Shown here piece by piece: positions 30,977 through 48,358 of a stretch of DNA of 64,000 bases. The notes beneath the pieces were generated by a model, which did not search any database, was not told the origin of the DNA, and saw only the letters and a program-made list of their open reading frames with translations. The position numbers and the translations under genes were made by a program. Every line of letters starts with the position of its first letter. The first letter of the stretch is position 1. The stretch covers positions 124,001-188,000 of the IMG/VR virus record IMGVR_UViG_3300009011_000002; one strand, given 5' to 3'.

Positions 30977-31354
30977 TTAACGCTTTACTGGTAGACGCGG
31001 GAAACGGGATTTGGTTTGCACCAGTTTGTTCAGCACAGCGCCGGTAGTGGCAAAGTAATCCGCCATCCGGTTGATGCCGAGTACCTTGAGTCCTTCATCG
31101 ACCTCGAAGGGCTGCAGTGTGAGCAGATTGATCGAAGGACCCCGATCGCCTTCGAAGTCGAACAGCTCATACGCCCGGTTCAAAGCAATGGCCCGGGCGC
31201 AGCCGGTTTGACGCATGTACCACAACACCCAATCGTTAGATGGGTGAGTACCGGCCTCGTTTGCCAGCTTGGGTTCTTGATCCAGCTGTTTTGCCAAACG
31301 GCAAAACACTTTGATCATGTTGCTGCCCATTTTGTTCAGAGGGGTAGTGTTCAT
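30977..31354 (-). CDS. WxxW-module protein
   Basis: EPKL...SNDWVLWYMRQTGCARAIA. Confidence 0.7.
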   Translation of the reverse strand: MNTTPLNKMGSNMIKVFCRLAKQLDQEPKLANEAGTHPSNDWVLWYMRQTGCARAIALNRAYELFDFEGDRGPSINLLTLQPFEVDEGLKVLGINRMADYFATTGAVLNKLVQTKSRFPRLPVKR

Positions 31355-31686
31355 ACTTCTTCCAGTTTCTTGTACTTAGGGTAATGACGACGGCGCTCTA
31401 CAAAAGGTGTTCTAGCATCAGGTAATACACTCTTACCTACTGCCCTGACCACTTCCATCCGCTGGTAAACCACAATAGCCGCAAAATGAGGCCGACGCTT
31501 CATAATGCGTTCGATGATGGTCACGTCCTGAAAGTAGCGAGTGGGTCCGCCTGACATAGACAACTGGCTACCGTGGGCACCATGTGGATAGCGAACAGCG
31601 CCGATGATAAAGTTACGATCAGGCCCACCGGCAGTCTTGATACCGTCGAGGGCTTCGCGGTGGTCGGTATACGGTAAGGTAGCCAT
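31351..31686 (-). CDS. hypothetical protein
   Basis: 111 aa, GGAG RBS. Confidence 0.6.
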   Translation of the reverse strand: MATLPYTDHREALDGIKTAGGPDRNFIIGAVRYPHGAHGSQLSMSGGPTRYFQDVTIIERIMKRRPHFAAIVVYQRMEVVRAVGKSVLPDARTPFVERRRHYPKYKKLEEV

Positions 31687-31743
31687 TAAAACAACTCCGG
31701 GTTTTCAAGATAGTTCTGGCTGTCCATCAGGTCGTCACGAGCG

Positions 31744-32049
31744 TTAATTAGAGACGGTTCTGCGCCCATTATCGGCCCTTGTCGGTGTGAAGTTGAGAAT
31801 GGCGTTGTCCAGGATCTCTATTAGCTGGAAGTCCTGTACATCGCCGTCGAAAGCAAACATCGATTTCTCGAGAGCCATGCCCTCGGCTTCGTCGTAGCTA
31901 ACGGCATGGGCCTGCATGCACCATTGGAGCCATGCAGGGTTGAACTGAATTTGGTTGACGATGTACAGCGGAGGCTGTACAAGGACATTTTGAGATTGCC
32001 CCAAGTGGGGTAGAAGATTAACCGGGTTACATGGGTAAAGGATCTTCAT
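31744..32049 (-). CDS. WxxW-module protein
   Basis: PPL...FNPAWLQWCMQAHAVSYDEA. Confidence 0.7.
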   Translation of the reverse strand: MKILYPCNPVNLLPHLGQSQNVLVQPPLYIVNQIQFNPAWLQWCMQAHAVSYDEAEGMALEKSMFAFDGDVQDFQLIEILDNAILNFTPTRADNGRRTVSN

Positions 32050-32276
32050 GGTTTGAACTTCCTTTTCGGTTTTGGTCTTCCGATGCGAAGCTCTCCCCGA
32101 CGGATCGCTTCTGCTCGGGTGCAGTTGTTAGTCAACATGCACCAATCGATCCAATCGGAGTTGAGCTCAGGAGGGTTGCCAACAGTAAGCGGTGGTTCTT
32201 CTGAGGTAATGCTGGTAAGTTTGATACAGTGTTTCATAGATCTCCTATATGGTTTATTGTTTAATTGTTTTGCCAA
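32046..32276 (-). CDS. WxxW-module protein (near stand-alone)
   Basis: EPPL...LNSDWIDWCMLTNNCTRAEA; may start at MKHC after AGGAG. Confidence 0.7.
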   Translation of the reverse strand: MAKQLNNKPYRRSMKHCIKLTSITSEEPPLTVGNPPELNSDWIDWCMLTNNCTRAEAIRRGELRIGRPKPKRKFKP

Positions 32277-33363
32277 GTTTCTTGGCTTTCTTCCGATACT
32301 TCCGCATCGCTTCCTTACAGGATTCGTCTGCGTTGATATAGAACTTGATACCCTCGACGATATCGTCCCAGGTAGGATAGAGCTTGCAGTTATCCATGAT
32401 GAACTTGACGAGCTTGCGATTGGTCAGGTCTTTACCCAACTTCTCGAGCTCTTGGTTCAACCGGCGGAGCCAGCTGTTGCTGAACCCGGAGTTGCTGTGG
32501 ATCTGACGGTGGCGTTTCGCAACGGCGCGCTTGCGGGCTTCCTCTTCTTCAGGCGTAGGGCCGTAGACGAAGTTGAAGTCTTCCAGGTTCACGGTCATGA
32601 TGTCGATCTCGCCGTCACCGAGAACTTCCATGGCCTTTTTGACCTGAGAAGGTGTCAGCCCCTTGCTCTTGAGGAACTCGCGGATCTGCCCCGTCTTAAC
32701 GATCTTGGCGGTGGCCTTACCGAAAAGATTTCCGTCGAACATTTCCTGACGTGCCTTGGAGGCAATCTGGATACCTGGCTCGCATAGAAGGTCGGTATCA
32801 CCAAGACTACCCGAGGGACGCTGGTGGCCGAGACGAACACCCAGCTTCAGATCGTGCAGCTCGGACAGCGCAGCATAAGAAACGTTGGTCAGGGTTACGG
32901 TACGCCCAGAAGGCAGCTTGAAGATACGAGGACCGATGTCACCCTCATTAATCTTTATGACCTCCCCCAACGTCGGAACTTTCAACCCGAGTTTAAGCCC
33001 ACTGAGAGGCAATTCCGTGTTATAAGCCTGTTGGTTTTTGGAGATTTCTTCCTCAGCTTTAGGTGGAGGAAGGACTACACCCAGAAACTCCAACCCGGTC
33101 ACATCACGTTTGCTTGTACGTCCTGCTTCGAGCAGCTTACTCCAGCCGGAGTTGAAAATACTGTTCTCGGCGTGGCTCTGGACGATCGCGTGGCTGAGGG
33201 CTTGCGTGAAGAACGAATCGTCACCGGTGAAGATTTTCTTAAGCTCTTCAACCGTGCTGTTCTCTACCAGTTTACGAAGTTCTTCCTTACGGTCGCCGGC
33301 AAATTGATCGAGCTTACCGGCTTCAAACATTGCCAGCAGTGCTTCTTTAAGATTGTTAGCCAT
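32254..33363 (-). CDS. hypothetical protein
   Basis: 369 aa ORF. Confidence 0.7.
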   Translation of the reverse strand: MANNLKEALLAMFEAGKLDQFAGDRKEELRKLVENSTVEELKKIFTGDDSFFTQALSHAIVQSHAENSIFNSGWSKLLEAGRTSKRDVTGLEFLGVVLPPPKAEEEISKNQQAYNTELPLSGLKLGLKVPTLGEVIKINEGDIGPRIFKLPSGRTVTLTNVSYAALSELHDLKLGVRLGHQRPSGSLGDTDLLCEPGIQIASKARQEMFDGNLFGKATAKIVKTGQIREFLKSKGLTPSQVKKAMEVLGDGEIDIMTVNLEDFNFVYGPTPEEEEARKRAVAKRHRQIHSNSGFSNSWLRRLNQELEKLGKDLTNRKLVKFIMDNCKLYPTWDDIVEGIKFYINADESCKEAMRKYRKKAKKLGKTIKQ

Positions 33364-33634
33364 TCTTCTGTTCCTTCAATTCTTCAATTCGGAGTTTGCA
33401 AGCAGCGAGGCTTGCCTTAGGGGAATAACGACGACGCAAACGGAACCACGTCACCCAAACCGGGTTAGGTTTACCGTTAGCCAGAGCGGGAGGAGGCTCT
33501 GGCATTTCTTTCAAACTGTCGTTGAAAGCATGGTGTGCTTCTTTGTAAGACACTCCCTTTTGTTGCATGTACGCTTGGACCCAGGTGTGATTAATCTCAC
33601 CTTTCTTGGAAATCAAAGGTGGTAGTGTGTTCAT
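33356..33634 (-). CDS. tandem two-WxxW-module protein
   Basis: PPL..INHTWVQAYMQQKGVSYKEA and PPAL..PNPVWVTWFRLRRRYSPKA. Confidence 0.7.
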   Translation of the reverse strand: MNTLPPLISKKGEINHTWVQAYMQQKGVSYKEAHHAFNDSLKEMPEPPPALANGKPNPVWVTWFRLRRRYSPKASLAACKLRIEELKEQKNG

Positions 33635-33650
33635 AGGGTCACCGTAAAAG

Positions 33651-34265
33651 TTATACCGTCAGCGCATCGATTTCTTTACGCTGTTCTTCCAGTTCCGCAC
33701 CAAAAGCTTTGATGTACAAATCCGGATAACGAGCATAACCACCAGTGCCGAACTTTTCCTTCAGATGCTTGAGAGCACCTTCACGACGCTCAGCAAGGGT
33801 CATCTCAGGGTTGTGCTTTTCTCGGTACATCACAGCACGATAGCGCATCTGAGTAACCCGACCTGGCAACCCACGATCCGCCGAGTTGATCAGTTCAGCA
33901 AATCGATTACTGAACTCCCCCTTGAATGAAGCACGATGTTGCTGACAGCCCAGGTATACATTCCTGAGTTCTTCACCTTGAAGGTTGTTAACAATCAGCG
34001 GGTGGTCAGTGGTAACCAGCCACTCGTAGCTGAGGGTGTGGTGATTATTACGGCTCCACGCGAACATGTCGTGGAAGTAAGCGGCGAACAACATCCACTT
34101 AGGGTCGTAACCCAACCCTAGGCGTTGATCGATCACCATAGCGGTTTGGAACACTTCTTCGAAATGTTCTTTGCGATGAGCTTTGTCATTCAGTTCCCAA
34201 AGCTCAGAGAACGACTCGATAATTTGTTTACGCAGTTCGCCAATCTGTTCTGGGGTGGTCATCAT
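33651..34265 (-). CDS. HD-domain metal-dependent phosphohydrolase
   Basis: AH..EH..EV...AAYFHD...H...INSAD motif order. Confidence 0.85.
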   Translation of the reverse strand: MMTTPEQIGELRKQIIESFSELWELNDKAHRKEHFEEVFQTAMVIDQRLGLGYDPKWMLFAAYFHDMFAWSRNNHHTLSYEWLVTTDHPLIVNNLQGEELRNVYLGCQQHRASFKGEFSNRFAELINSADRGLPGRVTQMRYRAVMYREKHNPEMTLAERREGALKHLKEKFGTGGYARYPDLYIKAFGAELEEQRKEIDALTV

Positions 34266-34549
34266 GCGTTTCCTTCTTGTAAGAGTTTGAGTTTAGCCAA
34301 CCCGCATTTCTTTGCGATGTTGGTTGTTACGTTGTTGTGGATCCGATACCAGTGGACCCACCGCACACTGAGGAACTGACCGGTCTTCGAAAGCTTAGGC
34401 TCCGGCATAGCCTTGATCCGTTCGATATGTTGGAACCGAGCAGTTACAGGGGTACACCCATGTTTCTGTTGATACCACAGCTGCCACGCTGGATTGAACC
34501 CACCATTCCCATCAATGAGACTGGGTTCTTTTAATAGGACCTTCGGCAT
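34262..34549 (-). CDS. tandem two-WxxW-module protein
   Basis: EPSL..FNPAWQLWYQQKHGCTPVTA and EPKL..LSVRWVHWYRIHNNVTTNIA. Confidence 0.75.
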   Translation of the reverse strand: MPKVLLKEPSLIDGNGGFNPAWQLWYQQKHGCTPVTARFQHIERIKAMPEPKLSKTGQFLSVRWVHWYRIHNNVTTNIAKKCGLAKLKLLQEGNA

Positions 34550-34585
34550 AATAATCCCTGAATATGTTAGCTATCTAACACCTTA

Positions 34586-34615
34586 GTAATATAGATGGGA
34601 GATCGGCTAAAACTT
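34586..34615 (-). promoter_or_regulatory. early promoter
   Basis: CCATCTATATTAC 37 nt upstream of the 34549 ATG. Confidence 0.75.
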
Positions 34616-34654
34616 AATACCGATGTATCGGGTTAATAGGTCGTATCAAAAAGA

Positions 34655-34699
34655 AATATAACCCCCTACTGCCTTTGTGGGGCAGTAGGGGGTTATATT
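34655..34699 (-). terminator. intrinsic terminator
   Basis: 19-bp perfect stem followed by a U-rich tract on the minus strand. Confidence 0.85.
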
Positions 34700-34709
34700 C
34701 GGTTACTCG

Positions 34710-35117
34710 TTAGCCGAACAATACGGACAGGTCAGGTTTAACCAAGTTGAGTAGCGTTCTCAATTCTTGATTGGCCGGATTCATGACCATTTCGTAGTGA
34801 GGGTACTGAGGTGTCCACTGCCGAGTGTCTTTCAACGGTGGTGGTTTCAGCCCACAGAATTCATCGATGATGTGGTCTTCTTGCTCCAACATCATGTTGA
34901 ACCGGACGGAACTGAGTTGTTGGTGACGCATGAGTTCCCCAACGTTCCATTGGGTATTATGGGCCATTACATCCATCCCAAGGAAATCCATCCAGGCCCT
35001 TTCGTTGACACGACCGTCTACCTTACGCAGGGGTTTAGGTCGGACTACTGTTGGGCGAAGACCTTTACCACGACCAAAGGCAGCAATCAGATCGAGAGTA
35101 GAATTATTAGAACGCAT
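34710..35117 (-). CDS. hypothetical protein (possible degenerate WxxW module)
   Basis: PKPL..DGRVNERAWMDF. Confidence 0.6.
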   Translation of the reverse strand: MRSNNSTLDLIAAFGRGKGLRPTVVRPKPLRKVDGRVNERAWMDFLGMDVMAHNTQWNVGELMRHQQLSSVRFNMMLEQEDHIIDEFCGLKPPPLKDTRQWTPQYPHYEMVMNPANQELRTLLNLVKPDLSVLFG

Positions 35118-35604: not shown

Positions 35605-35619
35605 GTTCTGTACCTTTAG

Positions 35620-36210: not shown

Positions 36211-36212
36211 CA

Positions 36213-36500: not shown

Positions 36501-36702
36501 TTCGTTTACTCAGCTCTTCTTGTATCAGCCAATGGTGTTCTTCGGTAATCACCAACGTGGGTGGGCCAAAGCGGTAGTATTTGAACGTGAAGCCACCGGG
36601 GAGCATCTGGTTCATGCCCCTCAGTGCAGGGAGGTCGAGAGTCTCAACGCACCGTTTGATGCGTTGTTCTTCTCGAGTAAGAAAGCGAAGCACCTTGCTC
36701 AT
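36466..36702 (-). CDS. hypothetical protein
   Basis: start MSKVLRF coupled to the upstream stop. Confidence 0.5.
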   Translation of the reverse strand: MSKVLRFLTREEQRIKRCVETLDLPALRGMNQMLPGGFTFKYYRFGPPTLVITEEHHWLIQEELSKRNDSQDSQVPRT

Positions 36703-37091
36703 TACCGGATTCCTTGATCGTACTGAACTTGTTGCCTGTTCAATGCATAGGCCAGAGAGCACACCTCTTCTGGGGTCATGCCGTCCCGCCTAGCAATGTC
36801 CATCACCCAACGTTGAGACAACTGCCCGTTGGGTGTCCACATGGACGGTGGTTCGTCTGGCAGTTCGGCTGTCAAGAAGTGCAGCTCATTACGAAGGCCT
36901 TGTTTCAACATGTTGGCCATCATCAGAACTGTTTCTTTGTCTTCGGGGTGGACGCTTACCACACGTCCAGCCTTAGCCAACTTCTCGGACATCCAGTTGG
37001 TCCATTCGAATGCCACACGGTCTTTGTGGGAAGTAAAGACCGTGGGTTCATCTTCGCCTGCTTGGTAACCCTTGTAGCCTGGTGGAAACAT
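36702..37091 (-). CDS. WxxW-module protein (variant)
   Basis: EPPSM..GQLSQRWVMDIARRDGMTPEEV; AGGAGG RBS. Confidence 0.7.
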   Translation of the reverse strand: MFPPGYKGYQAGEDEPTVFTSHKDRVAFEWTNWMSEKLAKAGRVVSVHPEDKETVLMMANMLKQGLRNELHFLTAELPDEPPSMWTPNGQLSQRWVMDIARRDGMTPEEVCSLAYALNRQQVQYDQGIR

Positions 37092-37312: not shown

Positions 37313-37798
37313 TCACATACCGAGTCGCTTAATGGCTTCTTGCAACAACTGGGTGTCAAAGGTCTTGCCAGCGATCTTGCCATCGCGTGTCAAGGAAGCC
37401 GCCAGGATCTCGAGGTGCTGGGAGATGTCCTTGTTGGTCATGTCGGATGGCGCTGGGATAAATGTCTTAGCCAGTGGGTTGTCCAGCATGGCCCGGAGTT
37501 TATCCAGTTCCTTGGTGGCCATCTTCATGCCTTCACTGAGAGCACCAATTGCTTGGATGCCTTTGAGCATGCCTTCGAAATTAGCGGCGAAGTTGCTTCT
37601 AAGGTCCGCAGGTTTGATGGAGTCGGCGTGGACTTTTTCGAGCTTACGCATCCCTGCCCCAAGACGCAGGCACATGTTCAGCTGTTCGATTGCAGCAGTG
37701 CGGTATTCCCGACTGGTACCGTCGGTCACAGGCAGTGCCAACACCATACGTTTCAGTGCACCCACTTGCCGTGCGTAATCATCGAGATCTTTGATCAT
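37313..37798 (-). CDS. hypothetical helical protein
   Basis: 161 aa, AGGAGG RBS. Confidence 0.65.
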   Translation of the reverse strand: MIKDLDDYARQVGALKRMVLALPVTDGTSREYRTAAIEQLNMCLRLGAGMRKLEKVHADSIKPADLRSNFAANFEGMLKGIQAIGALSEGMKMATKELDKLRAMLDNPLAKTFIPAPSDMTNKDISQHLEILAASLTRDGKIAGKTFDTQLLQEAIKRLGM

Positions 37799-38426
37799 CG
37801 GGTTCTACGCCTCCTTTTTCAATGAAGTCCTTGCCTATATGGATGGCAGCGACCAGTGAGATGTCATAGTGGTCACGCGCCCACTTAACCCACTCGTAGT
37901 TAAGGCCGCATTGCATGGAACCACTGAGTTTAGGTTCGCCGGGACGGCGGGCCAGATAAGTCCCTTTGGCATTCCAACGTTTGAGGAATGTGTGGATAGG
38001 AGAACCAGGGTTTTCCCTGATGCTGATTTCCAACGGAGTTTTATCGACAAGGCGACGACCGCTCTTGAAAATCCCCATCAAATCCAGACTGCCGTCTTCA
38101 AGGAAGAACTGACTGATGTCTTTGAAGTTGCCCCTGCCACTGACCGAATCAAAACTGGCTTCCGCATCTTCGATGCAGCTGAAGTACTGGCCGTTAGGAG
38201 GCAATTGGATCCAGCACTCTTGAGGAATGGCTTTGATCACATCCTCCGCCGACAGGTACTTAGGGATCCCACCAAACACCGTGCTGAAGGTACCAGGGCG
38301 AAGTCCGCCGTTCAGCAACTTATCCAACGTTGGAAAACCAACACTGAGTTTTTCCAGATGTTCCTTGGGGACCGGCTCAAATTCCGGCATTTTCAATTTG
38401 AGCCGATCAAACAAATCTTTATCCAT
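37779..38426 (-). CDS. RadA/DnaB-like N-terminal stub fused to a WxxW module
   Basis: LSVGFPTLDKLLNGGLRPG without Walker A; C-terminal EPKL..LNYEWVKWARDHYDISLVAA. Confidence 0.7.
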   Translation of the reverse strand: MDKDLFDRLKLKMPEFEPVPKEHLEKLSVGFPTLDKLLNGGLRPGTFSTVFGGIPKYLSAEDVIKAIPQECWIQLPPNGQYFSCIEDAEASFDSVSGRGNFKDISQFFLEDGSLDLMGIFKSGRRLVDKTPLEISIRENPGSPIHTFLKRWNAKGTYLARRPGEPKLSGSMQCGLNYEWVKWARDHYDISLVAAIHIGKDFIEKGGVEPDDQRSR

Positions 38427-40114: not shown

Positions 40115-40466
40115 TTTCGCGTTCCTTGTCAAAGTCTTCCCGGGTCTTTTCATCGAGCACAATGAATGCACGACCACACTTGCATTCAGATTGGCTCTTG
40201 ATCTTGAACCCGTACGAAGACAACAAAATAGCCCGGCCGTTAGCCAGCGGTTGGAGACAGAAAGTCTGTCCCTTAGAGGCAAACTTCAAGCGACGAAGTT
40301 CGTTGACGATCGAGACGTTGTAATGCGACTGGCAGTAATCATCGATCAGTTCTTCGAATACGTTGCGTATTTCCTTTTCATCGAGACCCTCAAAGAGCTT
40401 AGTCAAACGCTCCCCAAGTTTCTCCCCGGTCTCTTGGGAGTAGAAATGAGAGTCGTGTTCGGACAT
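40104..40466 (-). CDS. hypothetical protein
   Basis: 120 aa; coupled to upstream gene. Confidence 0.6.
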   Translation of the reverse strand: MSEHDSHFYSQETGEKLGERLTKLFEGLDEKEIRNVFEELIDDYCQSHYNVSIVNELRRLKFASKGQTFCLQPLANGRAILLSSYGFKIKSQSECKCGRAFIVLDEKTREDFDKERENER

Positions 40467-40840
40467 TACAACCCCGTGGCTTTCTTCATGGATTGGCGAA
40501 CTTCCACCAGGCGCATGATCAGCCCATCGACGTCGTCCTGCTCGAAGATCAGGAAACGAACTTCGTCGCCTTCATATGACCCATCACGACCAGTGCCGTC
40601 GTATTCAGTCGGCAGAGACAAGTTGGGATCCTTGCGAAGAGATTCCACTTTATCCCACAGATCGTCGCTGCCTGTGTTTGCAATTAGAGATTCAGGTGCC
40701 AGTGAAATAGAAACAAAGTCATTGTCACCACAGGCACCAGTTCCGATGTACAAGGTATCGTCAGTGCGATTTTCCCAGATCTTGGTGAACAGCACTTCGT
40801 GTTCGAGTGCTCTGAATTCAGCGCGGTTTACAATACGCAT
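40466..40840 (-). CDS. hypothetical protein
   Basis: 124 aa; first gene after a promoter. Confidence 0.7.
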   Translation of the reverse strand: MRIVNRAEFRALEHEVLFTKIWENRTDDTLYIGTGACGDNDFVSISLAPESLIANTGSDDLWDKVESLRKDPNLSLPTEYDGTGRDGSYEGDEVRFLIFEQDDVDGLIMRLVEVRQSMKKATGL

Positions 40841-40887: not shown

Positions 40888-40917
40888 GTAATATAGAGAC
40901 AAGACTTACTACAACTT
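40888..40917 (-). promoter_or_regulatory. early promoter
   Basis: AAGTTGTAGTAAGTCTTGTCTCTATATTAC. Confidence 0.75.
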
Positions 40918-41182
40918 AAGGGTAGACCTTAACGCGGAACAGCCCGTTGGTCGAGGGAACAGCTTGTAACTCCCACGTGAACGCTCCAACCGGTTTATCA
41001 GCAAGCTTCTGCGCAATCATGAGGCCGCCTATACGAGCAGCTTCCATGAAGCGGTGATCACCTACCATGGCTGGTGTTCTCCCATCCGCCGACATCGTGG
41101 ATGCACGCCAATGGACCCATTCTGGATTCAACAACTCCGGGTGTTGGTCGGCATCAACTTGAAGCTCGGGAATGAATTGCAT
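40916..41182 (-). CDS. WxxW-module protein
   Basis: PEL..LLNPEWVHWRA. Confidence 0.65.
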   Translation of the reverse strand: MQFIPELQVDADQHPELLNPEWVHWRASTMSADGRTPAMVGDHRFMEAARIGGLMIAQKLADKPVGAFTWELQAVPSTNGLFRVKVYP

Positions 41183-41196: not shown

Positions 41197-42042
41197 TTAC
41201 AGGCGAGCTTTCTGCTCGATGATTATTTCTGGGTCACGTTGGGAGTTATCAATGGTGATCTCAACGCTAGCTGGACGACCGGTCGGGAACACCATCTTTA
41301 CTACACGTGCGATAGCCTCGGTCCCGGCTTTTTCAGGGGTGTTGCTAGGATGTTGCGCCAAGAACCATTCGATCCAGTCGAAGGAGATGAAACGGCGAAC
41401 GTAGGGGTGGTTACCCGTAGGCTGTTTGGTGATAAACAGATCAGGTTCGGGTACGGCCGCTTGCGCTGCTCTGCCAGCCGCTTCCTTAAGTTCTTCACCG
41501 GTGAGCACGTGAACAGACTGACCTTTCTTCAACGCATTGGCCAGCTTGTAGAAATGGCTAGCCGTCGAAGCGAGCAATGCCAGTTCCTTTTCGTCGATCC
41601 GGCTATCAAAGCCGAATGCATTTTCGAAGAAGCCCAAACGGCGCAGGACCACGCGGAGTTCTTCAGACTGCCGTTCTTCACCCAGCTTCTTGGCCGCATC
41701 AACGTTAGAGTCTCGCAGCAAACCAGTGAGCGCCGGAGAAATGTCCTTGAACATACGGACGAGGTCATAACCGTCGAGGCCGTGGGACTTGAACGCATCG
41801 TCGAAAGCGTACAGGCGGTTCTGCAACCAATCGATACGGTCGAGGACGTTGTTGAAGAAGATCTGGGCTTGTTCTTTCTTGGCACCGGAGCATTGCTCGA
41901 TGATTTCTTTGGTGCCAGCCTCGAAGTAACCCTTGAAACCGAAATCGTTCTTGTCGGCCAATGGGCGTTGTTCGTAGTTGCACATGGTAAGGTTGGTAGC
42001 TTCTGATAAGCGCATAGTGGATTCCGTTCGAAGTACTGGCAT
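41197..42042 (-). CDS. helical protein with C-terminal WxxW module
   Basis: EPDL..ISFDWIEWFLAQHPSNTPEKA. Confidence 0.7.
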   Translation of the reverse strand: MPVLRTESTMRLSEATNLTMCNYEQRPLADKNDFGFKGYFEAGTKEIIEQCSGAKKEQAQIFFNNVLDRIDWLQNRLYAFDDAFKSHGLDGYDLVRMFKDISPALTGLLRDSNVDAAKKLGEERQSEELRVVLRRLGFFENAFGFDSRIDEKELALLASTASHFYKLANALKKGQSVHVLTGEELKEAAGRAAQAAVPEPDLFITKQPTGNHPYVRRFISFDWIEWFLAQHPSNTPEKAGTEAIARVVKMVFPTGRPASVEITIDNSQRDPEIIIEQKARL

Positions 42043-42045: not shown

Positions 42046-42618
42046 TTAACGACCTTTAGGTGGGTTACGTGGACAAGCTTTGCCGTTGGCATCATAGGGC
42101 GCGCTTGGATCAGGCAGTGGCTGGTAACCATTCCCTGGCAAACAACCGTCTGTACGGTCTAGGTGTTTGGTGCGTAACAGCAGTTGTTTCATTTCCGGCG
42201 ACGGCACGAGGACAGGAATGTGCACAGACCGAGGGTTTACAATCACGCCATTCTCTAACATGACGTGCGGTTGGTCTTGTTCTACTTTCACTTCACTACG
42301 TTTACGCAACCGCAGGTTCTTGCTACGCAGGTTACGGTTGGTGCGCTTCAACGAACCGATCTCGTTGGACATGTACACAACGCGCTGTACGAGGCCCGCT
42401 ACGTCCCATTCGGTTAATGGGGTACCATTCTGCTTGTAGGCGGCAAACGCCACCAGGAAGCGCTCTGCAGCGTCCAGGTTGGTGTCTTCCGGCAGGTAGA
42501 AGTCATCTCGGCGGATGGGTTCTTCCAGTTTGTGCTTGCCAATGAAACCGGACAAATACAGTTTCAACTTCTCGGTAACTTTGGCGAGGGGGAAACGCTT
42601 CTTGCTTTCGATGGCCAT
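42046..42618 (-). CDS. hypothetical protein with coiled coil and Pro-rich tail
   Basis: 190 aa; ends GYQPLPDP..PRNPPKGR. Confidence 0.7.
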   Translation of the reverse strand: MAIESKKRFPLAKVTEKLKLYLSGFIGKHKLEEPIRRDDFYLPEDTNLDAAERFLVAFAAYKQNGTPLTEWDVAGLVQRVVYMSNEIGSLKRTNRNLRSKNLRLRKRSEVKVEQDQPHVMLENGVIVNPRSVHIPVLVPSPEMKQLLLRTKHLDRTDGCLPGNGYQPLPDPSAPYDANGKACPRNPPKGR

Positions 42619-42656: not shown

Positions 42657-42686
42657 GTAATATAGGTTTAATAAAAACTAACACGG
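42657..42686 (-). promoter_or_regulatory. early promoter
   Basis: AAACCTATATTAC 39 nt upstream of the ATG. Confidence 0.8.
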
Positions 42687-42700: not shown

Positions 42701-42726
42701 CCTTAGGCGGAGCAATCCGCCTAAGG
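42701..42726 (-). terminator. intrinsic terminator
   Basis: 11-bp stem, 4-nt loop, U-rich tract on minus strand. Confidence 0.8.
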
Positions 42727-42734
42727 TATAACAC

Positions 42735-44216
42735 TTACTGGATGAGTTCCAGCTTACGGCTCAGTTCGATCTTCAGCGGGTTGCCGTTGTTCGGGATCAG
42801 GTTGTAGCGTTCCAGCTCTTCCGGCTTCTTCTCGCTGGACATGACGCGGTAAGCACCCTTGGTCCACGCCAGTGCGAAACTGCACGAGTGGACGTTACGG
42901 TACCAGTCGATCCATTCCTGGGACAGGGTGTGGACTGAGGTGGTGAGGTTGGGTTCTTTCGGGCCCTTGTCGATGAACTCTTCCAGGCTCTGCGTGAAGG
43001 TCTTCAGCGCGGTCATTGGATTGACTGGACGTTGTTTACCCAGCTGGACAATGACCATGTCTTCGGTGATCCGCTTGGCGTCGAGCCGCTTGGCTACCAG
43101 TTCGCCAAACAGCTGGTAGTATTCCGGACCGAAGTTAACCCAGTTACTACCACCGCCACCGAAGGTGTTTTGCAACGAGAAGTAATTCATTCCCATGGTG
43201 AGGTGGAACGAACGGAAGAGTGCGGCCAGGCGTTCGTCGTTGTAAGAACCGACAATCCGACGAAGGAGGTCTTCTTTCTCAAGAACCGGTTCGTTCTCGG
43301 CGCGGTTGTCGAGCACACGCTCGAAGGCTGCCAGGACCAGTTGTCGAGCAATAGGGAGTACTTCGTTCGGGTACTCCCAACTGCGCCCTTGTTCGCCGAT
43401 GATGACGAAGGTTTCATCCGAACGTTCCGCCCAGGTCTGCTGGATCCAGAACAGCATTTGCTTGAAGTTCATGCCAGCAACAATGCCCTTGAGCTTGGCG
43501 GTGACTTCCTTGCGTTTTTCTTCGGTGAGTTCAGTCACTTCTGGTTCCTTTTCGTTAATAGTTTGCTTCTTGGCCATTTCAAGAATGCGTTGCATGATAC
43601 CAGCCGCCACAGAGAGACTCGCGGGACCTTCGTAGCGGTACAATGCGCCGGTGACAACATCGAACTCGAAAGTGAAATCTTGTTTCGACTCGGTGGTCTC
43701 TAACCGGTAATTGAAAATGGTGCCTGGAGTGTCTCGGCTTTCGGTCACGTCCAACCGCCACCCAGCCTGGAGACCCTGAGAATCACCGTCGAGGTAAGCC
43801 CAGTTATGACGAATAAACAGCTTCGCCAGTTCCAAAGAGTGTTCCATTAACCTGCCTTGAGCTGCCGCCGAGTTGTTCAGCTTGTCAAGGATGTAGTTAT
43901 AAACCTCCGAGAAGACTTCGTACACATCACCAGGGCTGGTGCCGAAATCCAATGCAGTCAGACGGTCCCCTGCAAGGTTAGCCGATACTTCAAAGTCGCG
44001 GATAGGGACCCCTTCACCACGGCCGGAGCTGTACTTGAACCCGTAACCAGGCGTACCGGCGAAGTATTGCAACCGCCATTCACCGATGGTCAGCCCAGGG
44101 GAGTAACTGGACCAGTTCATGACCGCGAACACACCGGCCAGTTCTTTAATTTTGTGGGCCAAGTCGGCAGCTTGTTTCAGTTCCATGTCCTTACTCGTCA
44201 TCACGAACAACTCCAT
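42735..44216 (-). CDS. multidomain protein with C-terminal WxxW module
   Basis: 493 aa; two similar N-terminal domains (NW....G...WRL); EPNL..LSQEWIDWYRNVHSCSFALA. Confidence 0.75.
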   Translation of the reverse strand: MELFVMTSKDMELKQAADLAHKIKELAGVFAVMNWSSYSPGLTIGEWRLQYFAGTPGYGFKYSSGRGEGVPIRDFEVSANLAGDRLTALDFGTSPGDVYEVFSEVYNYILDKLNNSAAAQGRLMEHSLELAKLFIRHNWAYLDGDSQGLQAGWRLDVTESRDTPGTIFNYRLETTESKQDFTFEFDVVTGALYRYEGPASLSVAAGIMQRILEMAKKQTINEKEPEVTELTEEKRKEVTAKLKGIVAGMNFKQMLFWIQQTWAERSDETFVIIGEQGRSWEYPNEVLPIARQLVLAAFERVLDNRAENEPVLEKEDLLRRIVGSYNDERLAALFRSFHLTMGMNYFSLQNTFGGGGSNWVNFGPEYYQLFGELVAKRLDAKRITEDMVIVQLGKQRPVNPMTALKTFTQSLEEFIDKGPKEPNLTTSVHTLSQEWIDWYRNVHSCSFALAWTKGAYRVMSSEKKPEELERYNLIPNNGNPLKIELSRKLELIQ

Positions 44217-44604: not shown

Positions 44605-44840
44605 TACTTACTTCCCCTGATTGGTTTGCAAGAAACTTCGATGTTGCTGCTCGTCCCGTTACGAGCCTTCATGTACTGCGTCGACGACGAGTAGACGTGG
44701 TTACGAAGCCCCACATGCTCTACCACGGCCATCATGGCAGAACGACACTCGTTGGAGTCTACGATCTGGGAAATGTTCCCATGGACCGGCTGACCGTTAA
44801 CACTTGCCATGAAGTAGGTAGCAATTAGCAGGGCTTTCAT
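44604..44840 (-). CDS. small exported protein
   Basis: hydrophobic N-terminus, two Cys. Confidence 0.55.
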   Translation of the reverse strand: MKALLIATYFMASVNGQPVHGNISQIVDSNECRSAMMAVVEHVGLRNHVYSSSTQYMKARNGTSSNIEVSCKPIRGSK

Positions 44841-44875
44841 AAACGATAGGCCTCTCAGTTAAACGAAAAATAAAA

Positions 44876-44893
44876 GTGGACCCGAAGGTCCAC
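44876..44893 (-). terminator. intrinsic terminator with UUCG loop
   Basis: GTGGACC-TTCG-GGTCCAC followed by TTTTATTTTT on minus strand. Confidence 0.85.
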
Positions 44894-44921
44894 CTTTACC
44901 ACATTGCCTGTAAGCAGTTGC

Positions 44922-46442: not shown

Positions 46443-46515
46443 GTTTACAAACTCCTTTATCAGTTAGGTGGATTATCCAATCGAAGTCGAATAATCTTGT
46501 TATCTTATCACCCAA

Positions 46516-46545
46516 GTAATACAGGTTTGAAAACAACTGTAACTT
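46516..46545 (-). promoter_or_regulatory. early promoter
   Basis: AAGTTACAGTTGTTTTCAAACCTGTATTAC. Confidence 0.7.
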
Positions 46546-46549
46546 AAAT

Positions 46550-46888
46550 TTATCCGCACTGGATAACAGGTTTTGGTGGAGGGTTGGTAGGTGGAGGGAA
46601 CTTACGGACCAGTTTTAAGTGCGAACATTTGACCAATGCAAGTTCACCGAAGTCAGTCTCACCTGTCGACGTCACGTACTCCAGTTCGCATGGAGGTGTA
46701 GCATGGGCCACTATCCATGCTGCATCGTCCGCGTTATTGTCGAAGACGTAGAACGACGTCTCATGCTTCGAGTTACCATCCCGCATGCAGGGAATGAATC
46801 GGATCAAGTGAACGTGGGTGCCGATGTTGACCTTCGTGATGTCAGCATCAGTGATGATACAAAGATCACCTTTCTCGAGCTTGTCCAT
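46550..46888 (-). CDS. hypothetical protein (SH3/KOW-like N-terminus)
   Basis: LEKGDLCII...NIGT.V pattern. Confidence 0.55.
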   Translation of the reverse strand: MDKLEKGDLCIITDADITKVNIGTHVHLIRFIPCMRDGNSKHETSFYVFDNNADDAAWIVAHATPPCELEYVTSTGETDFGELALVKCSHLKLVRKFPPPTNPPPKPVIQCG

Positions 46889-46890
46889 AG

Positions 46891-47331
46891 TTACCCCTTA
46901 GGCTTCTTCCAGCCGTAGTCAGCTTTCCAGAACACCAGTTCTTTACCTGGCCAATCAGAGAACACACTGTTCAACGCCATGATGTCGTATTCATCGAAAT
47001 CATAGGCAATCGAAATATGGGGGAGTGGGGTCTCGTAGGCATGCTGGTAACCGGCATCCCGCAAGCGGCGGAACTCTTCGTTGAGGTCCGGGCTGGTGAG
47101 GTGGAAGACTACACCATCACCGAGGGGTTCCAGCTTGGTGACGAATGCACGGAACTCACGCTCCGGGTGCAGTTCAGCCAGTGGGCGGTCGATACCACGG
47201 TCGTCGAAGATTATGGTGGAGTGCAGGTCATGCTTGGGGATCTGTACCCCACATTCGCCCAGGAGCTTGTAGATCTCCATGATGAACTCGGGTTTCAGTT
47301 CTGCGGCTACGTAGCTGTAGTCACGTTCCAT
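46891..47331 (-). CDS. acb1: Acb1/T4 gp57B-like 2H phosphoesterase (anti-CBASS nuclease)
   Basis: YVAA, LHSTI and H.Y...PHISIAY motifs, 146 aa, C-terminal Trp, matching T4 gp57B/Acb1 layout. Confidence 0.8.
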   Translation of the reverse strand: MERDYSYVAAELKPEFIMEIYKLLGECGVQIPKHDLHSTIIFDDRGIDRPLAELHPEREFRAFVTKLEPLGDGVVFHLTSPDLNEEFRRLRDAGYQHAYETPLPHISIAYDFDEYDIMALNSVFSDWPGKELVFWKADYGWKKPKG

Positions 47332-47588
47332 TATTTCTTTTTCCTTGTAACGAAGATAGCGTGGATATTAGGTCTACTGCCAATGCGTTGGTTCAAGCGG
47401 CGACCCACCAAAGCTTGTTTAGAACTCGGGTGTGGGCAATCGTAAGCGAAGTAGGAAGAACCGTTGGTAAAATAAACAAGGTCAGGAAGTTCCGGGTAAG
47501 GAGTAAAACTCATCCCCCCAAAAGATAACACGCCCAGGTCTGAGTGATCACAAGTGCCCGTCATCACTATTCTTGGAAACATAATCAC
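47331..47588 (-). CDS. hypothetical protein
   Basis: 85 aa; coupled to the acb1-like gene. Confidence 0.5.
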   Translation of the reverse strand: MIMFPRIVMTGTCDHSDLGVLSFGGMSFTPYPELPDLVYFTNGSSYFAYDCPHPSSKQALVGRRLNQRIGSRPNIHAIFVTRKKK

Positions 47589-47614
47589 CCCAAAGCAAAA
47601 AAGAAAAGGTTAAG

Positions 47615-47638
47615 TACCGTCCGGGTAACCGGACGGTA
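47615..47638 (-). terminator. intrinsic terminator
   Basis: TACCGTCCGG-GTAA-CCGGACGGTA with downstream U-tract. Confidence 0.75.
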
Positions 47639-47641
47639 TTG

Positions 47642-47851
47642 TTACTGAATAATGCTTACAGTAACTTGGATCAACGGGCCATCTTTACTCAGCTTATTGG
47701 AGAGCCGGGTAATAGCCTGGCGCTGTTCGTCAGAGAACGCACGGAGACTGCTGAACACGTTCGTGGTGAGCACGTGATTTCCGAGTGTAAATAACACATG
47801 TTTCTTGGCGTCATAGCCGGCTTTACGAGCAAGACCGAGAAGACCGCTCAT
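47642..47851 (-). CDS. hypothetical protein
   Basis: 69 aa; coupled. Confidence 0.55.
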   Translation of the reverse strand: MSGLLGLARKAGYDAKKHVLFTLGNHVLTTNVFSSLRAFSDEQRQAITRLSNKLSKDGPLIQVTVSIIQ

Positions 47852-48018
47852 TAGTCGATCGTCCAGCGGGGGTTCTTGATGTAGACCGACTGGATGGTGC
47901 CTTTCTTTAGGCGTTGTTGCAGACGTTCAGCAGCGGCTTTGGATTCCTCCACCATGGCGAGAGGACCGCTGTGGGAGAGACGGTGTGCATCCACGAACAT
48001 CAAGTACTTGCTTTCCAT
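47851..48018 (-). CDS. hypothetical protein
   Basis: likely start MESKYL at 48018 after AAGGA. Confidence 0.5.
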   Translation of the reverse strand: MESKYLMFVDAHRLSHSGPLAMVEESKAAAERLQQRLKKGTIQSVYIKNPRWTID

Positions 48019-48022
48019 GGTG

Positions 48023-48358
48023 TTACTTCCTTTTGATTTTGACGATGTAAGGTGAAGACGGCGACGAAGAGAGTGGGACAGTTTCAAATTCCCGACCTTC
48101 GAAAACAGCTGCATTACGTTCAACAACGCTTCGCGTAGCTTCGGTGACAGCCTGAGCGAAGGCAGCTTTGGTATAGGTTGCACGAGGACCTCCGTTGTCA
48201 ATCCAGTGGGGTGGAAGATCGACATGAGGGGCAAGGGCCTCTACAAACTTTTTGGCGTCGGCTTTGTCGATCTCTTGTGCCCGCCATTGCAACCAGTCCA
48301 GGTTGATTACGTATGGACTGACGTCAACTGCGTGGAGCAGGGGTGGTGGTATTTGCAT
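48023..48358 (-). CDS. WxxW-module protein
   Basis: PPPL..INLDWLQWRAQ; AGGAGG RBS. Confidence 0.65.
   Translation of the reverse strand: MQIPPPLLHAVDVSPYVINLDWLQWRAQEIDKADAKKFVEALAPHVDLPPHWIDNGGPRATYTKAAFAQAVTEATRSVVERNAAVFEGREFETVPLSSSPSSPYIVKIKRK

What the first reader, a model, noticed from the sequence alone, without database searches (positions are those of the whole stretch)
30977..48358. Expanded, apparently unannotated 'WxxW' two-helix module reused across 11 early genes
Seen: a ~35-aa unit, consensus P-x-L-(5-15 aa)-[FLI]-[NS]-x-x-W-[VIL]-x-W-[YCFRA]-x4-5-[CVI]-[ST]-x-x-x-A, occurs in 30977 (SNDWVLWYMRQTGCARAIA), 31744 (NPAWLQWCMQAHAVSYDEA), 32046 (NSDWIDWCMLTNNCTRAEA), 33356 (two copies), 34262 (two copies), 36702 (SQRWVMDIARRDGMTPEEV), 37779 (NYEWVKWARDHYDISLVAA), 40916 (NPEWVHWR), 41197 (SFDWIEWF), 42735 (SQEWIDWYRNVHSCSFALA) and 48023 (NLDWLQWR). 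That is 13 copies, with weaker ones in 34710 and 48983. It appears alone, in tandem, or at the end of unrelated cargo domains. All are minus-strand genes in the early-promoter region, interleaved with the HD hydrolase, GNAT and Acb1-like genes. Knowledge: the second half (Y-x-x-x-x-G-C-S-x-x-x-A) resembles the helix-turn-helix of UBA-like EF-Ts/NAC domains and the L7/L12 C-terminal domain. Inference: a shared docking or addressing tag that sends varied early effectors to one target (a host complex such as ribosome, RNAP or a defence sensor, or a phage compartment), or a diversified decoy family. This is my best candidate for an undescribed system.
Basis: partly seen in the sequence, partly recalled or inferred. 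Interest (0 to 1): 0.9.

Follow-up and report, generated by a model that had tools for sequence, protein, structure and literature searches.

The report
Undescribed Trp-core mini-domain family, EL-like phages
A real, so far unannotated ~40-residue protein module (short beta-hairpin plus two helices around two tryptophans) is reused in about ten genes of this EL-like jumbo phage and in its relatives, and what it binds is still unknown.

Summary
The window comes from a distant relative of Pseudomonas jumbo phage EL. An HMM built only from unrelated database homologs recovers 9 module copies in 7 minus-strand genes at 31-49 bits. Two more score 12.6-14.7 bits, against a shuffled maximum of 12.0. 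ORFs 36702 and 48023 are supported only indirectly. ORFs 34710 and 48983 are not supported.

The module is EPxL-x5-G-x-[LP]-[NS]-x-x-W-[VI]-x-W-[YF]-x5-[VC]-[ST]-x3-A-x3-G-x2-[RK]-[LI]. With an MSA, AlphaFold2 gives hairpin, helix, 3-residue turn, helix at pLDDT 90.8. Pfam, PHROGs, NCBIfam, PDB sequences and Foldseek/PDB return nothing.

A 1.84-billion-protein search finds 92 proteins. Related metagenomic contigs carry 5-11 copies each. Phage EL itself has only gp133 (tandem) and gp84. PaBG has one copy in an unannotated ORF.

Conserved positions look like fold core, surfaces are hypervariable, and charge ranges from -4 to +8. Module genes are under purifying selection (omega about 0.17), like their neighbours.

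Most likely this is an ancient, sub-functionalised family of small binding modules in a promoter-driven accessory region, rather than one shared address tag. Function is untested.

The parts
34436..34534 (-). Module copy 1 of tandem protein ORF 34262-34549 (EL gp133 ortholog)
   Evidence: 44.0 bits with the independent HMM. In the AF2 model (pLDDT 90.8) it is a hairpin plus helices H20-30 and H34-47.
34286..34423 (-). Module copy 2 of tandem protein ORF 34262-34549, the basic copy (net helix charge +5)
   Evidence: 49.4 bits. 41-44% identical to EL gp133 by tblastn, E about 1e-12. AF2 helices H62-72 and H76-93.
33518..33622 (-). Module copy 1 of the second tandem protein, ORF 33356-33634 (second W replaced by A: HTWVQAY)
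   Evidence: 37.4 bits with the independent HMM. It was not among the seeds and still scored 19.9 bits with the seed HMM.
33380..33514 (-). Module copy 2 of ORF 33356-33634 (net helix charge +7)
   Evidence: 42.6 bits. Orthologs occur in L003, L007, L009 and EL.
32254..33363 (-). Partner gene immediately downstream of tandem gene 33356. It has no module itself.
   Evidence: Its C-terminal domain is fused to a tandem module in P0023 (BLASTP E 6e-11). The gene following the tandem gene in L003 and L009 is homologous to it.
32082..32201 (-). Single module of the stand-alone 76-aa protein ORF 32046-32276, followed by a basic tail (GRPKPKRKFKP)
   Evidence: 44.1 bits. Best leave-one-out score, 39.6 bits. 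Orthologs P0037, P0040, P0046 and L003 11167-11391 share the PKPKRKF-type tail.
31870..31989 (-). Single module in ORF 31744-32049 (acidic, net charge -3)
   Evidence: 30.7 bits; leave-one-out 24.7 bits.
31163..31285 (-). Single module in the middle of ORF 30977-31354
   Evidence: 43.8 bits. It has its own orthologous subfamily: P0044, P0047, P0059, P0062.
37818..37943 (-). C-terminal module of the 215-aa protein ORF 37779-38426
   Evidence: 35.3 bits. The N-terminal cargo has no known family.
42852..42965 (-). C-terminal module of the 493-aa protein ORF 42735-44216
   Evidence: 37.8 bits. The C-terminal region is orthologous to L009 2667-3362, which carries a 41.6-bit module.
41305..41463 (-). 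Diverged module with a roughly 10-residue insertion in the hairpin, near the C-terminus of ORF 41197-42042
   Evidence: 12.6 bits, just above the shuffled maximum of 12.0. Leave-one-out 10.2 bits. Marginal.
41108..41182 (-). N-terminal half-module (hairpin plus first helix) of ORF 40916-41182
   Evidence: 14.7 bits covering HMM positions 5-27 only. Leave-one-out 14.9 bits.
48284..48346 (-). Doubtful half-module at the N-terminus of ORF 48023-48358
   Evidence: 7.7 bits, within background. It resembles the 40916 N-terminus (13/36 identical, E 2e-5). The gene is retained in sister phage A under purifying selection.
36993..37067 (-). Degenerate N-terminal copy (DEPTVF...AFEWTNW) in ORF 36702-37091.
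   Evidence: 8.7 and 7.8 bits, not significant alone. The whole protein is homologous to L009 7792-8277 (E 1e-11) and L003 2829-3215, members of the 'DEPSxF' branch that do score as modules.
34586..34594 (-). Promoter-like motif CTATATTAC upstream of the operon 34549 to 30544, which holds 7 module copies in 5 genes
   Evidence: The motif occurs 7 times, all on the minus strand, against 0.36 expected. It resembles the published predicted promoters of phiKZ (TATATTAC) and EL (WTTTYAAACCTACATTATY) (PMC7058600 Table 2).
40888..40896 (-). Promoter-like motif CTATATTAC upstream of 40466-40840
42657..42665 (-). Promoter-like motif AAACCTATATTAC upstream of 42046-42618, 41197-42042 and 40916-41182
34654..34700 (-). 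Strong hairpin terminator (20-bp stem followed by a T run) that closes the upstream operon
   Evidence: Further terminator-like hairpins lie at 42701-42726 and 44869-44900.

Best explanation
The region encodes an undescribed family of small protein domains. Each module is about 40 residues: a short beta-hairpin (EPxL...G.L), an N-capped helix (N-P-x-W-V-x-W-Y), a 3-residue turn (G-[VC]-S) and a second helix (xxxAxxxGxxRL).

The two tryptophans, the Tyr/Phe, the Leu/Val and the small A-x-x-x-G positions most likely form the hydrophobic core of a very small autonomous fold (inferred). The remaining surface is free to vary.

The founder architecture is a ~100-aa tandem pair (EL gp133 type). The module also occurs singly (46-77 aa proteins, some with a basic PKPKRKF tail), in 3-4 copies, and fused to the N- or C-terminus of unrelated, unannotated domains.

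The family is old within an EL-like clade of jumbo phages and is also present in PaBG. It sits in a conserved accessory gene block between RNase H/ligase and GNAT/GroEL. That block is transcribed from phiKZ/EL-type phage promoters, and each paralog is kept by purifying selection.

My best reading of the mechanism is inferred, not shown. The module is a compact binding scaffold, and its variable surface gives each paralog its own partner, either protein or nucleic acid. It therefore recruits or anchors different accessory proteins rather than sending them all to one place. The tandem protein 33356 probably works with the adjacent 32254-33363 product. The conserved basic patch R-x-[RK]-[KR]-[RK]-V-S-T-N in the second module of the tandem subfamily probably contacts nucleic acid or an acidic partner.
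For: Family is real:
- Leave-one-out and independent-HMM scores are far above shuffled and reversed controls.
- 92 proteins reach E<=1e-3 and 16 reach E<=1e-10 among 1.84 billion representatives.
- Plain tblastn finds EL gp133 at about 1e-12.

Fold:
- AF2 with a 21-sequence MSA gives pLDDT 90.8 and pTM 0.74, with hairpin-helix-turn-helix twice.
- The independently predicted EL gp133 model matches at TM 0.75-0.80.

Undescribed:
- Nothing in Pfam, PHROGs, NCBIfam, PDB sequence profiles or Foldseek/PDB.
- No mention in the papers searched.

Core-like conservation and variable surface:
- High-information columns are E9, P10, L12, G18, L20, N21, W24, V25, W27, Y28, V34, S35, A39, G43, R46 and L47.
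- All other columns carry less than about 1.7 bits, and helix net charge ranges from -4 to +8.

Old, individually conserved paralogs:
- Orthologs of 33356/34262, 32046, 36702 and the 42735 C-terminus occur in L003/L007/L009.
- Clusters of 5-11 copies occur in L003, L007, L008 and L009.
- Omega is 0.00-0.33 (median 0.17), against 0.13-0.15 for neighbours.

Partner link: the P0023 fusion and the conserved adjacency.

Basic patch in the tandem subfamily: alignment A2.

Transcription context: motif CT[AG]TATTAC, 7 of 7 on the coding strand, some immediately after terminator-like hairpins.
Against: - No experiment or interaction prediction bears on what any copy binds.
- I could not read the model coordinates, so 'conserved = buried' rests on helical periodicity and residue type only. 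A partly exposed W/Y face could itself be a shared docking surface.
- None of the fusion partners has a known function, so guilt by association gives nothing.
- Whole-gene dN/dS does not show the diversifying selection expected of an arms-race binder family. Site-level tests were not possible with 2-3 sequences.
- The 'independent' HMM was built from sequences originally recruited by a window-derived profile. It is independent in sequence but not in ascertainment.
- Early expression is inferred from a promoter motif, not measured.
Confidence: 0.5

Rival explanations
1. The module is a minimal nucleic-acid-binding domain of helix-turn-helix or ribbon-helix-helix type. On this reading the family is a lineage-specific expansion of small transcription or RNA regulators for a phage that brings its own RNA polymerases.
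For: - The element order (strand(s), helix, G-x-S turn, helix) and the size of about 40-45 residues recall RHH/HTH units (sequence pattern; secondary structure).
- A tandem pair is the commonest architecture, as expected for a pseudo-dimer.
- The second module of the tandem subfamily carries a conserved basic R-x-[RK]-[KR]-[RK]-V-S-T-N stretch, with net charge +5 and +7 in the window copies.
- The single-module subfamily has a basic PKPKRKF tail.
- Jumbo phages are known to expand small putative DNA-binding domains: Zn-ribbons and Myb-type HTHs (PMC7824862).
Against: - Foldseek against the PDB returns no RHH, Arc/MetJ/CopG or HTH protein at a meaningful score (best E 1.9; homeodomain hits at E>5).
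- No HTH or RHH Pfam family is hit, even at E up to 1.
- Many copies are neutral or acidic, down to -4.
- DSSP suggests an intramodule hairpin rather than one long strand.
Confidence: 0.22
2. The module is one shared address or docking tag. Its conserved EPxL and W-x-x-W-Y face would bind a single host or phage structure (ribosome, RNAP, EPI vesicle, nuclear shell or import machinery) and bring varied cargo there.
For: - The same module sits at the N- or C-terminus of unrelated cargo domains (37779, 41197, 42735; P0036, P0039, P0072, P0088).
- It is confined to relatives of a nucleus-forming phage. The EL record annotates a nuclear shell protein and PhuZ.
- The invariant aromatic residues could be partly exposed.
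- The genes lie behind phage-type promoters.
Against: - The conserved positions fit a fold core (i, i+1, i+3, i+4 on helix 1; A-x-x-x-G-x-x-R-L on helix 2), and nothing else is conserved family-wide.
- Many family members consist of modules only, with no cargo to address.
- EL manages with 2 module proteins, so the tag cannot be a general sorting route.
- By my recollection of the published phiKZ import work, import selectivity is attributed to surface patches rather than to a linear tag. I listed those papers but did not read them.
Confidence: 0.12
3. The module is mainly a self-association (homo- or hetero-dimerisation) unit. Tandem proteins are intramolecular pseudo-dimers, and single-module proteins pair with each other, so the paralogs assemble into one or several multi-protein complexes.
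For: - pTM 0.74 for the tandem protein implies a defined packing of module 1 against module 2.
- At least 28 of 87 proteins have two detectable copies, and some have 3-4.
- The hydrophobic stripe on helix 1 (W24, V25, W27, Y28) is wider than needed to pack against one helix (inference).
- The genes are co-transcribed in a few operons.
Against: No multimer prediction or experiment is available. Single-module proteins of 46-77 aa are common and could equally be monomeric. Charge diversity does not obviously give complementary pairs.
Confidence: 0.14
4. There is no real feature: a chance recurrence of a short W-x-x-W motif in unrelated small ORFs.
Against: Nine copies score 31-49 bits with an HMM from unrelated sequences, against a shuffled maximum of 12.0. 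Homologs are found in EL, PaBG and many metagenomic contigs. The fold prediction is confident and reproducible. The genes are under purifying selection.
Confidence: 0.01

Closest known systems
Pseudomonas phage EL gp133 (YP_418166, UniProt Q2Z0U8) and gp84 (YP_418117, Q2Z0Z7), both annotated 'hypothetical protein'
   Same: gp133 is the ortholog of window ORFs 34262-34549 and 33356-33634: 41-44% identity, the same tandem two-module architecture, the same syntenic position, and a predicted structure matching at TM 0.75-0.80. gp84 carries one C-terminal module at 47 bits.
   Different: EL has only these 2 module proteins (3 copies) in 211 kb. The window has at least 9 module proteins in 17 kb. 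Neither EL protein has any described function or family assignment.
Lineage-specific expansions of small domains in jumbo phages (about 35 Zn-ribbon copies in Bacillus phage G; Myb-type HTH expansion in subgroup 3.2), described in PMC7824862
   Same: A very small domain is multiplied into many paralogous small genes within one jumbo-phage lineage, with function inferred only by analogy.
   Different: The fold is different: no metal ligands and no tri-helical Myb repeat. The phage group is different (EL-like, group 1). This module is also fused to larger cargo domains and has no detectable relative among characterised domains.
Ribbon-helix-helix (Arc/MetJ/CopG) and simple helix-turn-helix DNA-binding units
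   Same: Similar size of about 40-45 residues. Same element order: beta element, helix, G-x-S/T turn, helix. Frequent pairing of two units.
   Different: No sequence or structure match to any RHH or HTH family. The beta element appears to be an intramodule hairpin. A Trp-Trp-Tyr core is not an RHH feature. Many copies are acidic.
UBA-like domains (EF-Ts N-terminal, NAC) and the ribosomal L7/L12 C-terminal domain
   Same: A short helix-turn-helix stretch with a small residue in the turn.
   Different: UBA is a three-helix bundle and the L12 CTD is an alpha/beta domain, whereas the module is a hairpin plus two helices. No hit to these families by Pfam, PDB profile or Foldseek.
Multigene families of large eukaryotic DNA viruses (poxvirus ankyrin/BTB-Kelch, ASFV MGF); analogy from general knowledge
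   Same: A conserved scaffold with variable surfaces, present in many paralogs clustered in an accessory genome region and interleaved with host-interaction genes (here Acb1, GNAT, HD).
   Different: There is no evidence here of rapid copy-number change or positive selection. The paralogs are old and under purifying selection.

Membership tests
WxxW module family (EL gp133/gp84 type; defined here) | Matches the module profile built from homologs outside this phage, above shuffled background | tested here: met
   Nine copies at 30.7-49.4 bits and two at 12.6-14.7, against a shuffled maximum of 12.0. 36702 and 48023 fall below threshold.
WxxW module family (EL gp133/gp84 type; defined here) | Predicted hairpin + helix + 3-residue turn + helix fold shared with EL gp133 | tested here: met
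   AF2 pLDDT 90.8. Foldseek hit to the EL Q2Z0U8 model: E 4.4e-7, TM 0.75/0.80. Only the tandem protein 34262 was modelled.
UBA-like (EF-Ts N-terminal / NAC) | Compact three-helix bundle of about 40 residues recognisable by UBA/TS_N-type profiles | tested here: not met
   Two helices plus a hairpin per module. No UBA-clan hit in Pfam at E<=1, in PDB profiles at E<=10 or in Foldseek/PDB.
Ribosomal protein L7/L12 C-terminal domain | Alpha/beta domain of about 70 residues with a three-stranded sheet, matching the Ribosomal_L12 profile | tested here: not met
   No Pfam hit. No Foldseek hit to L7/L12 chains. The module is about 40 residues with two helices.
Ribbon-helix-helix (Arc/MetJ/CopG) | Sequence or structure similarity to RHH families | tested here: not met
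   No RHH Pfam family at E<=1. No RHH structure among Foldseek hits at E<=10.
Ribbon-helix-helix (Arc/MetJ/CopG) | Two units pair their N-terminal strands into one antiparallel sheet that contacts DNA | not testable with these tools
   Model coordinates are not readable here, and no multimer or DNA-complex prediction is available. DSSP shows two short bridges per module, which looks more like an intramodule hairpin.
Tri-helical helix-turn-helix DNA-binding domains (including Myb/homeodomain) | Three-helix core with a recognition helix, matching HTH profiles or structures | tested here: not met
   Only two helices per module. Homeodomain/HTH Foldseek hits appear only at E>5 with TM<0.3. No HTH Pfam hits. 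The Trp spacing is W-x2-W, not the Myb spacing of about 19 residues.
Any curated family in Pfam-A 2025, PHROGs v4 or NCBIfam 20.0 | Score above the family's threshold | tested here: not met
   No hit for 10 window proteins, 10 canonical relatives or the family consensus. The best was phrog_23126 at E 0.0045, over 23 residues only.
Lineage-specific expanded small-domain families of jumbo phages (a kind, not a homologous family) | Many paralogous copies of one small domain within one jumbo-phage lineage | tested here: met
   At least 11 copies in the window. 5-11 copies in each of L003, L007, L008 and L009. 3 copies in EL.
phiKZ/EL-type early transcription units | Genes preceded by the phage-specific promoter consensus (phiKZ TATATTAC; EL AAACCTACATTAT) | tested here: met
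   CT[AG]TATTAC occurs 7 times, all on the coding strand, against 0.36 expected. Four occurrences lie in the region, in intergenic gaps. Published consensus taken from PMC7058600 Table 2.
phiKZ/EL-type early transcription units | Measured expression in the first minutes of infection | not testable with these tools
   No transcriptome exists for this phage, and none was found for EL gp133.

The most novel reading that the evidence does not exclude
The module is a genuine sorting or docking domain of a nucleus-forming phage. Its invariant EPxL / W-x-x-W-Y face would bind one phage- or host-built structure (early infection vesicle, nuclear shell or import apparatus, ribosome or RNAP), so that a 40-residue transferable tag determines where accessory proteins act. 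A related novel variant: the W-x-x-x-[YF] helix docks into the weakly Pex14-N-like segment of the adjacent, sometimes fused, partner protein 32254-33363.
Probability: 0.1. Interest if true: 0.85.

Novelty: new member of a known kind. Interest (0 to 1): 0.45.

Why it matters
Most genes of jumbo phages have no annotation. This result turns about ten 'hypothetical' genes of this phage into one defined domain family. It does the same for EL gp133 and gp84, an unannotated PaBG ORF and some 90 metagenomic protein clusters. The family now has a confident fold model, a profile and clear subfamilies.

The module is tiny, autonomous and portable: it occurs alone, in tandem and fused. It sits next to counter-defence-type genes such as Acb1. 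That makes it a tractable handle on what the accessory, probably early gene block of EL-like nucleus-forming phages does. If it proved to be a localisation or recruitment tag, it would bear on how these phages sort proteins. If it is a nucleic-acid binder, it would add candidate regulators for phage-encoded RNA polymerases, for which few are known.

Tried and rejected
- Near-identity DNA search of the region against 50,697 phage genomes: no match.
- tblastn of the stand-alone module protein 32046: no match.
- The search for homologous proteins with 34262: only a 99%-identical sister copy.
- Single-sequence AlphaFold2: too poor to use (pLDDT 55).
- IMG/VR scans: the first alignment was too diverse to yield a pattern. 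The second pattern found no relatives.
- Pfam, PHROGs, NCBIfam, PDB sequence profiles and Foldseek/PDB for the module: nothing. The only PDB 'hits' were antibody framework WVSWYQQ strands, which are spurious.
- Fusion partners and cargo domains (P0005, P0014, P0036, P0072, P0080, P0088, P0048, P0092, P0032, P0050; window ORFs 32254, 42735, 37779): no known family or solved relative.
- Candidate links to published early jumbo-phage proteins were rejected. JADA is a 721-aa protein located downstream of an nvRNAP subunit. The ribosome binder PhiKZ014 corresponds to EL gp099, not to a module protein.
- A uniformly basic nucleic-acid-binding surface: rejected for the family as a whole, since charge ranges from -4 to +8. 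It is kept as a possibility for the tandem subfamily.
- A gene-wide arms-race signature: not seen (omega about 0.17).

Full report
**What the window is.** The large ORFs identify a jumbo myovirus of the phiKZ/EL type. They include a tail fibre about 30-33% identical to those of Psa21, 201phi2-1 and EL, a GroEL-type chaperonin, an NAD-dependent ligase, SbcC, and fragments resembling split RNA-polymerase beta subunits. No phage in a 50,697-genome collection is close at the DNA level. The gene order is that of phage EL 123-163 kb in inverted orientation: tail fibre, GroEL, GNAT, small genes, Acb1-like, RNase H, ligase. The RefSeq record of EL annotates a nuclear shell protein and PhuZ, so the nearest isolate is a nucleus-forming phage. 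Sister phages 73-100% identical at the protein level exist in public read assemblies.

**Checking the observation.** Every quoted segment is present in the stated minus-strand ORFs. The regex [NS]xxW[VILMQT]xW occurs 13 times in minus-strand frames and twice in plus-strand frames, and 11 of the 13 fall in the named ORFs. Aligning these 11 shows more than a W-x-x-W. There is an upstream E-P-x-L at a nearly fixed distance, a [LF]-[NS] just before the first Trp, and a downstream [CV]-[ST]-x-x-x-A.

Seeds match their own model by construction, so I used three controls:
- Leave-one-out. All 11 are recovered above the best non-family ORF (9.8-39.6 bits against 4.9-7.9).
- A copy not among the seeds. 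The first module of 33356, where the second Trp is Ala, scores 19.9 bits, against shuffled maxima of 5-11 and a reversed maximum of 4.8.
- An HMM built from 107 module segments of database homologs, excluding the window and its sister phages. Nine copies score 30.7-49.4 bits: 30977, 31744, 32046, 33356 (two), 34262 (two), 37779 and 42735. ORF 40916 scores 14.7 and 41197 scores 12.6. The maximum over 50 shuffles is 12.0.

ORFs 36702 (8.7 and 7.8 bits) and 48023 (7.7 bits) are within background, and 34710 and 48983 give nothing. ORF 36702 is nevertheless a full-length homolog of ORFs in L009 and L003 that belong to a diverged 'DEPSxF...W..W' branch and do score as modules. ORF 48023 resembles only the N-terminal half-module of 40916 (E 2e-5).

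**What the module looks like.** The consensus from 128 copies is MPEPPLVTNSKGGLNPEWVDWYRAKHGVSLNEALKAGKARLAE. The information-rich columns are E9, P10, L12, G18, L20, N21, W24, V25, W27, Y28, V34, S35, A39, G43, R46 and L47.

AlphaFold2 on a single sequence was poor (pLDDT 55). With a 21-sequence alignment of the tandem subfamily (A2) the 95-residue protein 34262-34549 is predicted at pLDDT 90.8 and pTM 0.74. Each module shows two short beta bridges (a hairpin), an 11-residue helix starting at the N-P-x-W cap, a 3-residue turn, and a 14-18-residue helix.

The conserved residues sit at i, i+1, i+3 and i+4 on helix 1 and at A-x-x-x-G-x-x-R-L on helix 2. I read that as a Trp/Tyr core packed on small residues. 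This is an inference from periodicity, because model coordinates cannot be read here.

**Is it known?** Pfam-A, PHROGs v4 and NCBIfam return nothing for ten window proteins, ten canonical relatives or the consensus. PDB sequence profiles return nothing meaningful. Foldseek against the PDB has a best E of 1.9. Against viral predicted structures the only real hit is EL gp133 (E 4.4e-7, TM 0.75-0.80), with a faint hit to EL gp84. Literature searches found no description. The comparative jumbo-phage survey PMC7824862 reports analogous expansions of Zn-ribbons and Myb-type HTHs but not this module.

**Distribution.** A profile of the 12 window copies against 1.84 billion representative proteins gives 92 hits at E<=1e-3 and 16 at E<=1e-10. 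Three of the 92 are obvious repeat-protein false positives. The architectures are:
- tandem pairs of about 100-115 aa, the commonest form, which includes EL gp133;
- single modules of 46-77 aa, one subfamily with a basic PKPKRKF tail like window ORF 32046;
- 3-4-copy proteins;
- fusions to unannotated domains of up to 618 aa.

Among isolates the module is found in the EL group, in vB_PQ1 (gp84-like) and in PaBG, where a 55.5-bit copy lies in an unannotated ORF. The whole EL genome has only gp133 (two copies) and gp84 (one copy). Metagenomic relatives carry clusters like the window's. L003 has 9 strong copies in 6 proteins next to acetyltransferase and GroEL. L007 has 8 in 5, L008 has 5 in 3 next to Acb1, and L009, part of a 237-kb contig, has about 11 in 8. 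Several window paralogs have their own orthologs in these loci. 'Expanded' is therefore true relative to EL, but the multi-copy state is ancient and shared.

**Selection and gene flux.** Against two sister phages, module genes have omega of 0.00-0.33 (median 0.17), and neighbouring genes have medians of 0.13-0.15. Every module gene whose position the fetched sister loci cover is retained there. The HD gene 33651-34265 is absent from both sisters. The sisters instead carry a Kelch-repeat gene on the other strand where the window has the 34550-34709 gap.

**Context.** GNAT and Acb1 are confirmed, and HD is only weakly supported. The larger intergenic gaps hold CT[AG]TATTAC, often as AAACCTATATTAC. 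It occurs 7 times, all on the coding strand, against 0.36 expected, and some occurrences directly follow terminator-like hairpins. It blends the published predicted promoters of phiKZ (TATATTAC) and EL (WTTTYAAACCTACATTATY) (PMC7058600 Table 2). One such unit, 34594 to 30544, holds seven module copies in five genes. Early timing is inferred from this motif, not measured.

**Functional leads.**
- P0023 fuses a tandem module to the C-terminal domain of the window's next gene, 32254-33363 (E 6e-11). That gene follows the tandem gene in L003 and L009 as well. This is a Rosetta-stone link.
- In the tandem subfamily the second module carries a conserved basic R-x-[RK]-[KR]-[RK]-V-S-T-N stretch. The window copies have net charge +5 and +7.
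- Across the family, charge ranges from -4 to +8 and surfaces are hypervariable.
- None of the cargo domains has a known family or a solved relative.

**Interpretation.** High confidence: this is a real, undescribed, fold-defined mini-domain family of EL-like jumbo phages. Moderate confidence: it is a compact binding scaffold whose variable surface gives each old paralog its own partner. The tandem founder possibly contacts nucleic acid or an acidic partner and works with the 32254 product. The rivals are a minimal RHH/HTH-like nucleic-acid binder family, a single shared docking tag, and a dimerisation unit that links the paralogs. A chance motif is excluded.

I could not test binding, localisation, oligomeric state or residue burial. 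The decisive experiments are listed separately.

Noticed in passing
window 1695-1703, 22585-22593, 34586-34594, 40888-40896, 42657-42665, 46516-46524, 55825-55833 (all minus strand): A phage-specific promoter-like motif, CT[AG]TATTAC, often extended to AAACCTATATTAC. It occurs 7 times against 0.36 expected, always on the coding strand and in intergenic gaps, some right after hairpin terminators. It blends the published phiKZ and EL promoter predictions.
   Followed up: partly
L016 11644-12135 (PaBG NC_022096, about 10.7-11.2 kb, reverse strand): Pseudomonas phage PaBG (Baikalvirus) has a strong module copy (55.5 bits; ...GPEPALRAANGRPNVDWIKWYRATTGCGLKEAF...) in an ORF between gp018 and gp017 that the record does not annotate. 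P0048 and P0092 look like its relatives.
   Followed up: partly
window 32254-33363 (-) and P0023: P0023 is a natural fusion of a tandem module with the C-terminal domain of this 369-aa protein (E 6e-11). The same protein has a weak, sub-threshold Pex14_N-like stretch at residues 229-246 (E 0.003). Helix 1 of the module contains W-x-x-x-[YF], the motif class that Pex14 N-domains bind (my knowledge). This may be coincidence.
   Followed up: partly
window 33651-34265 (-) and 34550-34709; L018 10128-11039, L019 8578-9489: The HD-like gene between the two tandem-module genes is absent from both sister phages. The sisters instead carry a Kelch-repeat gene on the opposite strand where the window has a terminator-plus-promoter gap. 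This is gene flux inside the module cluster.
   Followed up: partly
window 32046-32081 (C-terminal tail of ORF 32046-32276); P0037, P0040, P0046, P0036: The single-module subfamily ends in a conserved basic tail (PKPKRKF and variants) that looks like a nuclear-localisation-type or nucleic-acid-binding tail.
   Followed up: no
alignment A2 (P0003, P0010, P0013, P0020, P0021, P0025, P0042, P0074): Many tandem-subfamily orthologs end in a conserved C-terminal E-H-[RL]-x-x-x-W tail. It is missing from both window tandem proteins and from EL gp133.
   Followed up: no
window 30544-30951 (-): The last gene of the module-rich operon encodes a 135-aa protein with an N-terminal signal-peptide-like segment (MKSFGLLILLFSSLAFASV). 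It is conserved in EL (gp136), L003, L007 and L009 at the same position just before the GNAT gene.
   Followed up: no
window 37779-38426 (-), residues about 22-53: The cargo part of this module protein contains a RecA/DnaB-like 'GFPTLDKLLNGGLRPG' stretch but no Walker A motif (phrog_19 DnaB-like helicase, E 0.072 only). It may be a degenerate ATPase remnant.
   Followed up: no
window 47851-48234 versus 48023-48358 (-): Two long ORFs overlap here. The homolog in L008 aligns only to the last 55 residues of the first ORF, so its true start is probably the ATG at 48018. That leaves 48023-48358 as a separate, tightly packed gene.
   Followed up: yes
L015 (Pseudomonas phage vB_PQ1, PQ516283): The record shows the major head protein, DnaB and the polymerase each split into several short CDSs and lists many 'CRISPR' repeat_regions. 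It looks like an EL-like genome with many frameshift errors rather than real gene fragmentation.
   Followed up: no
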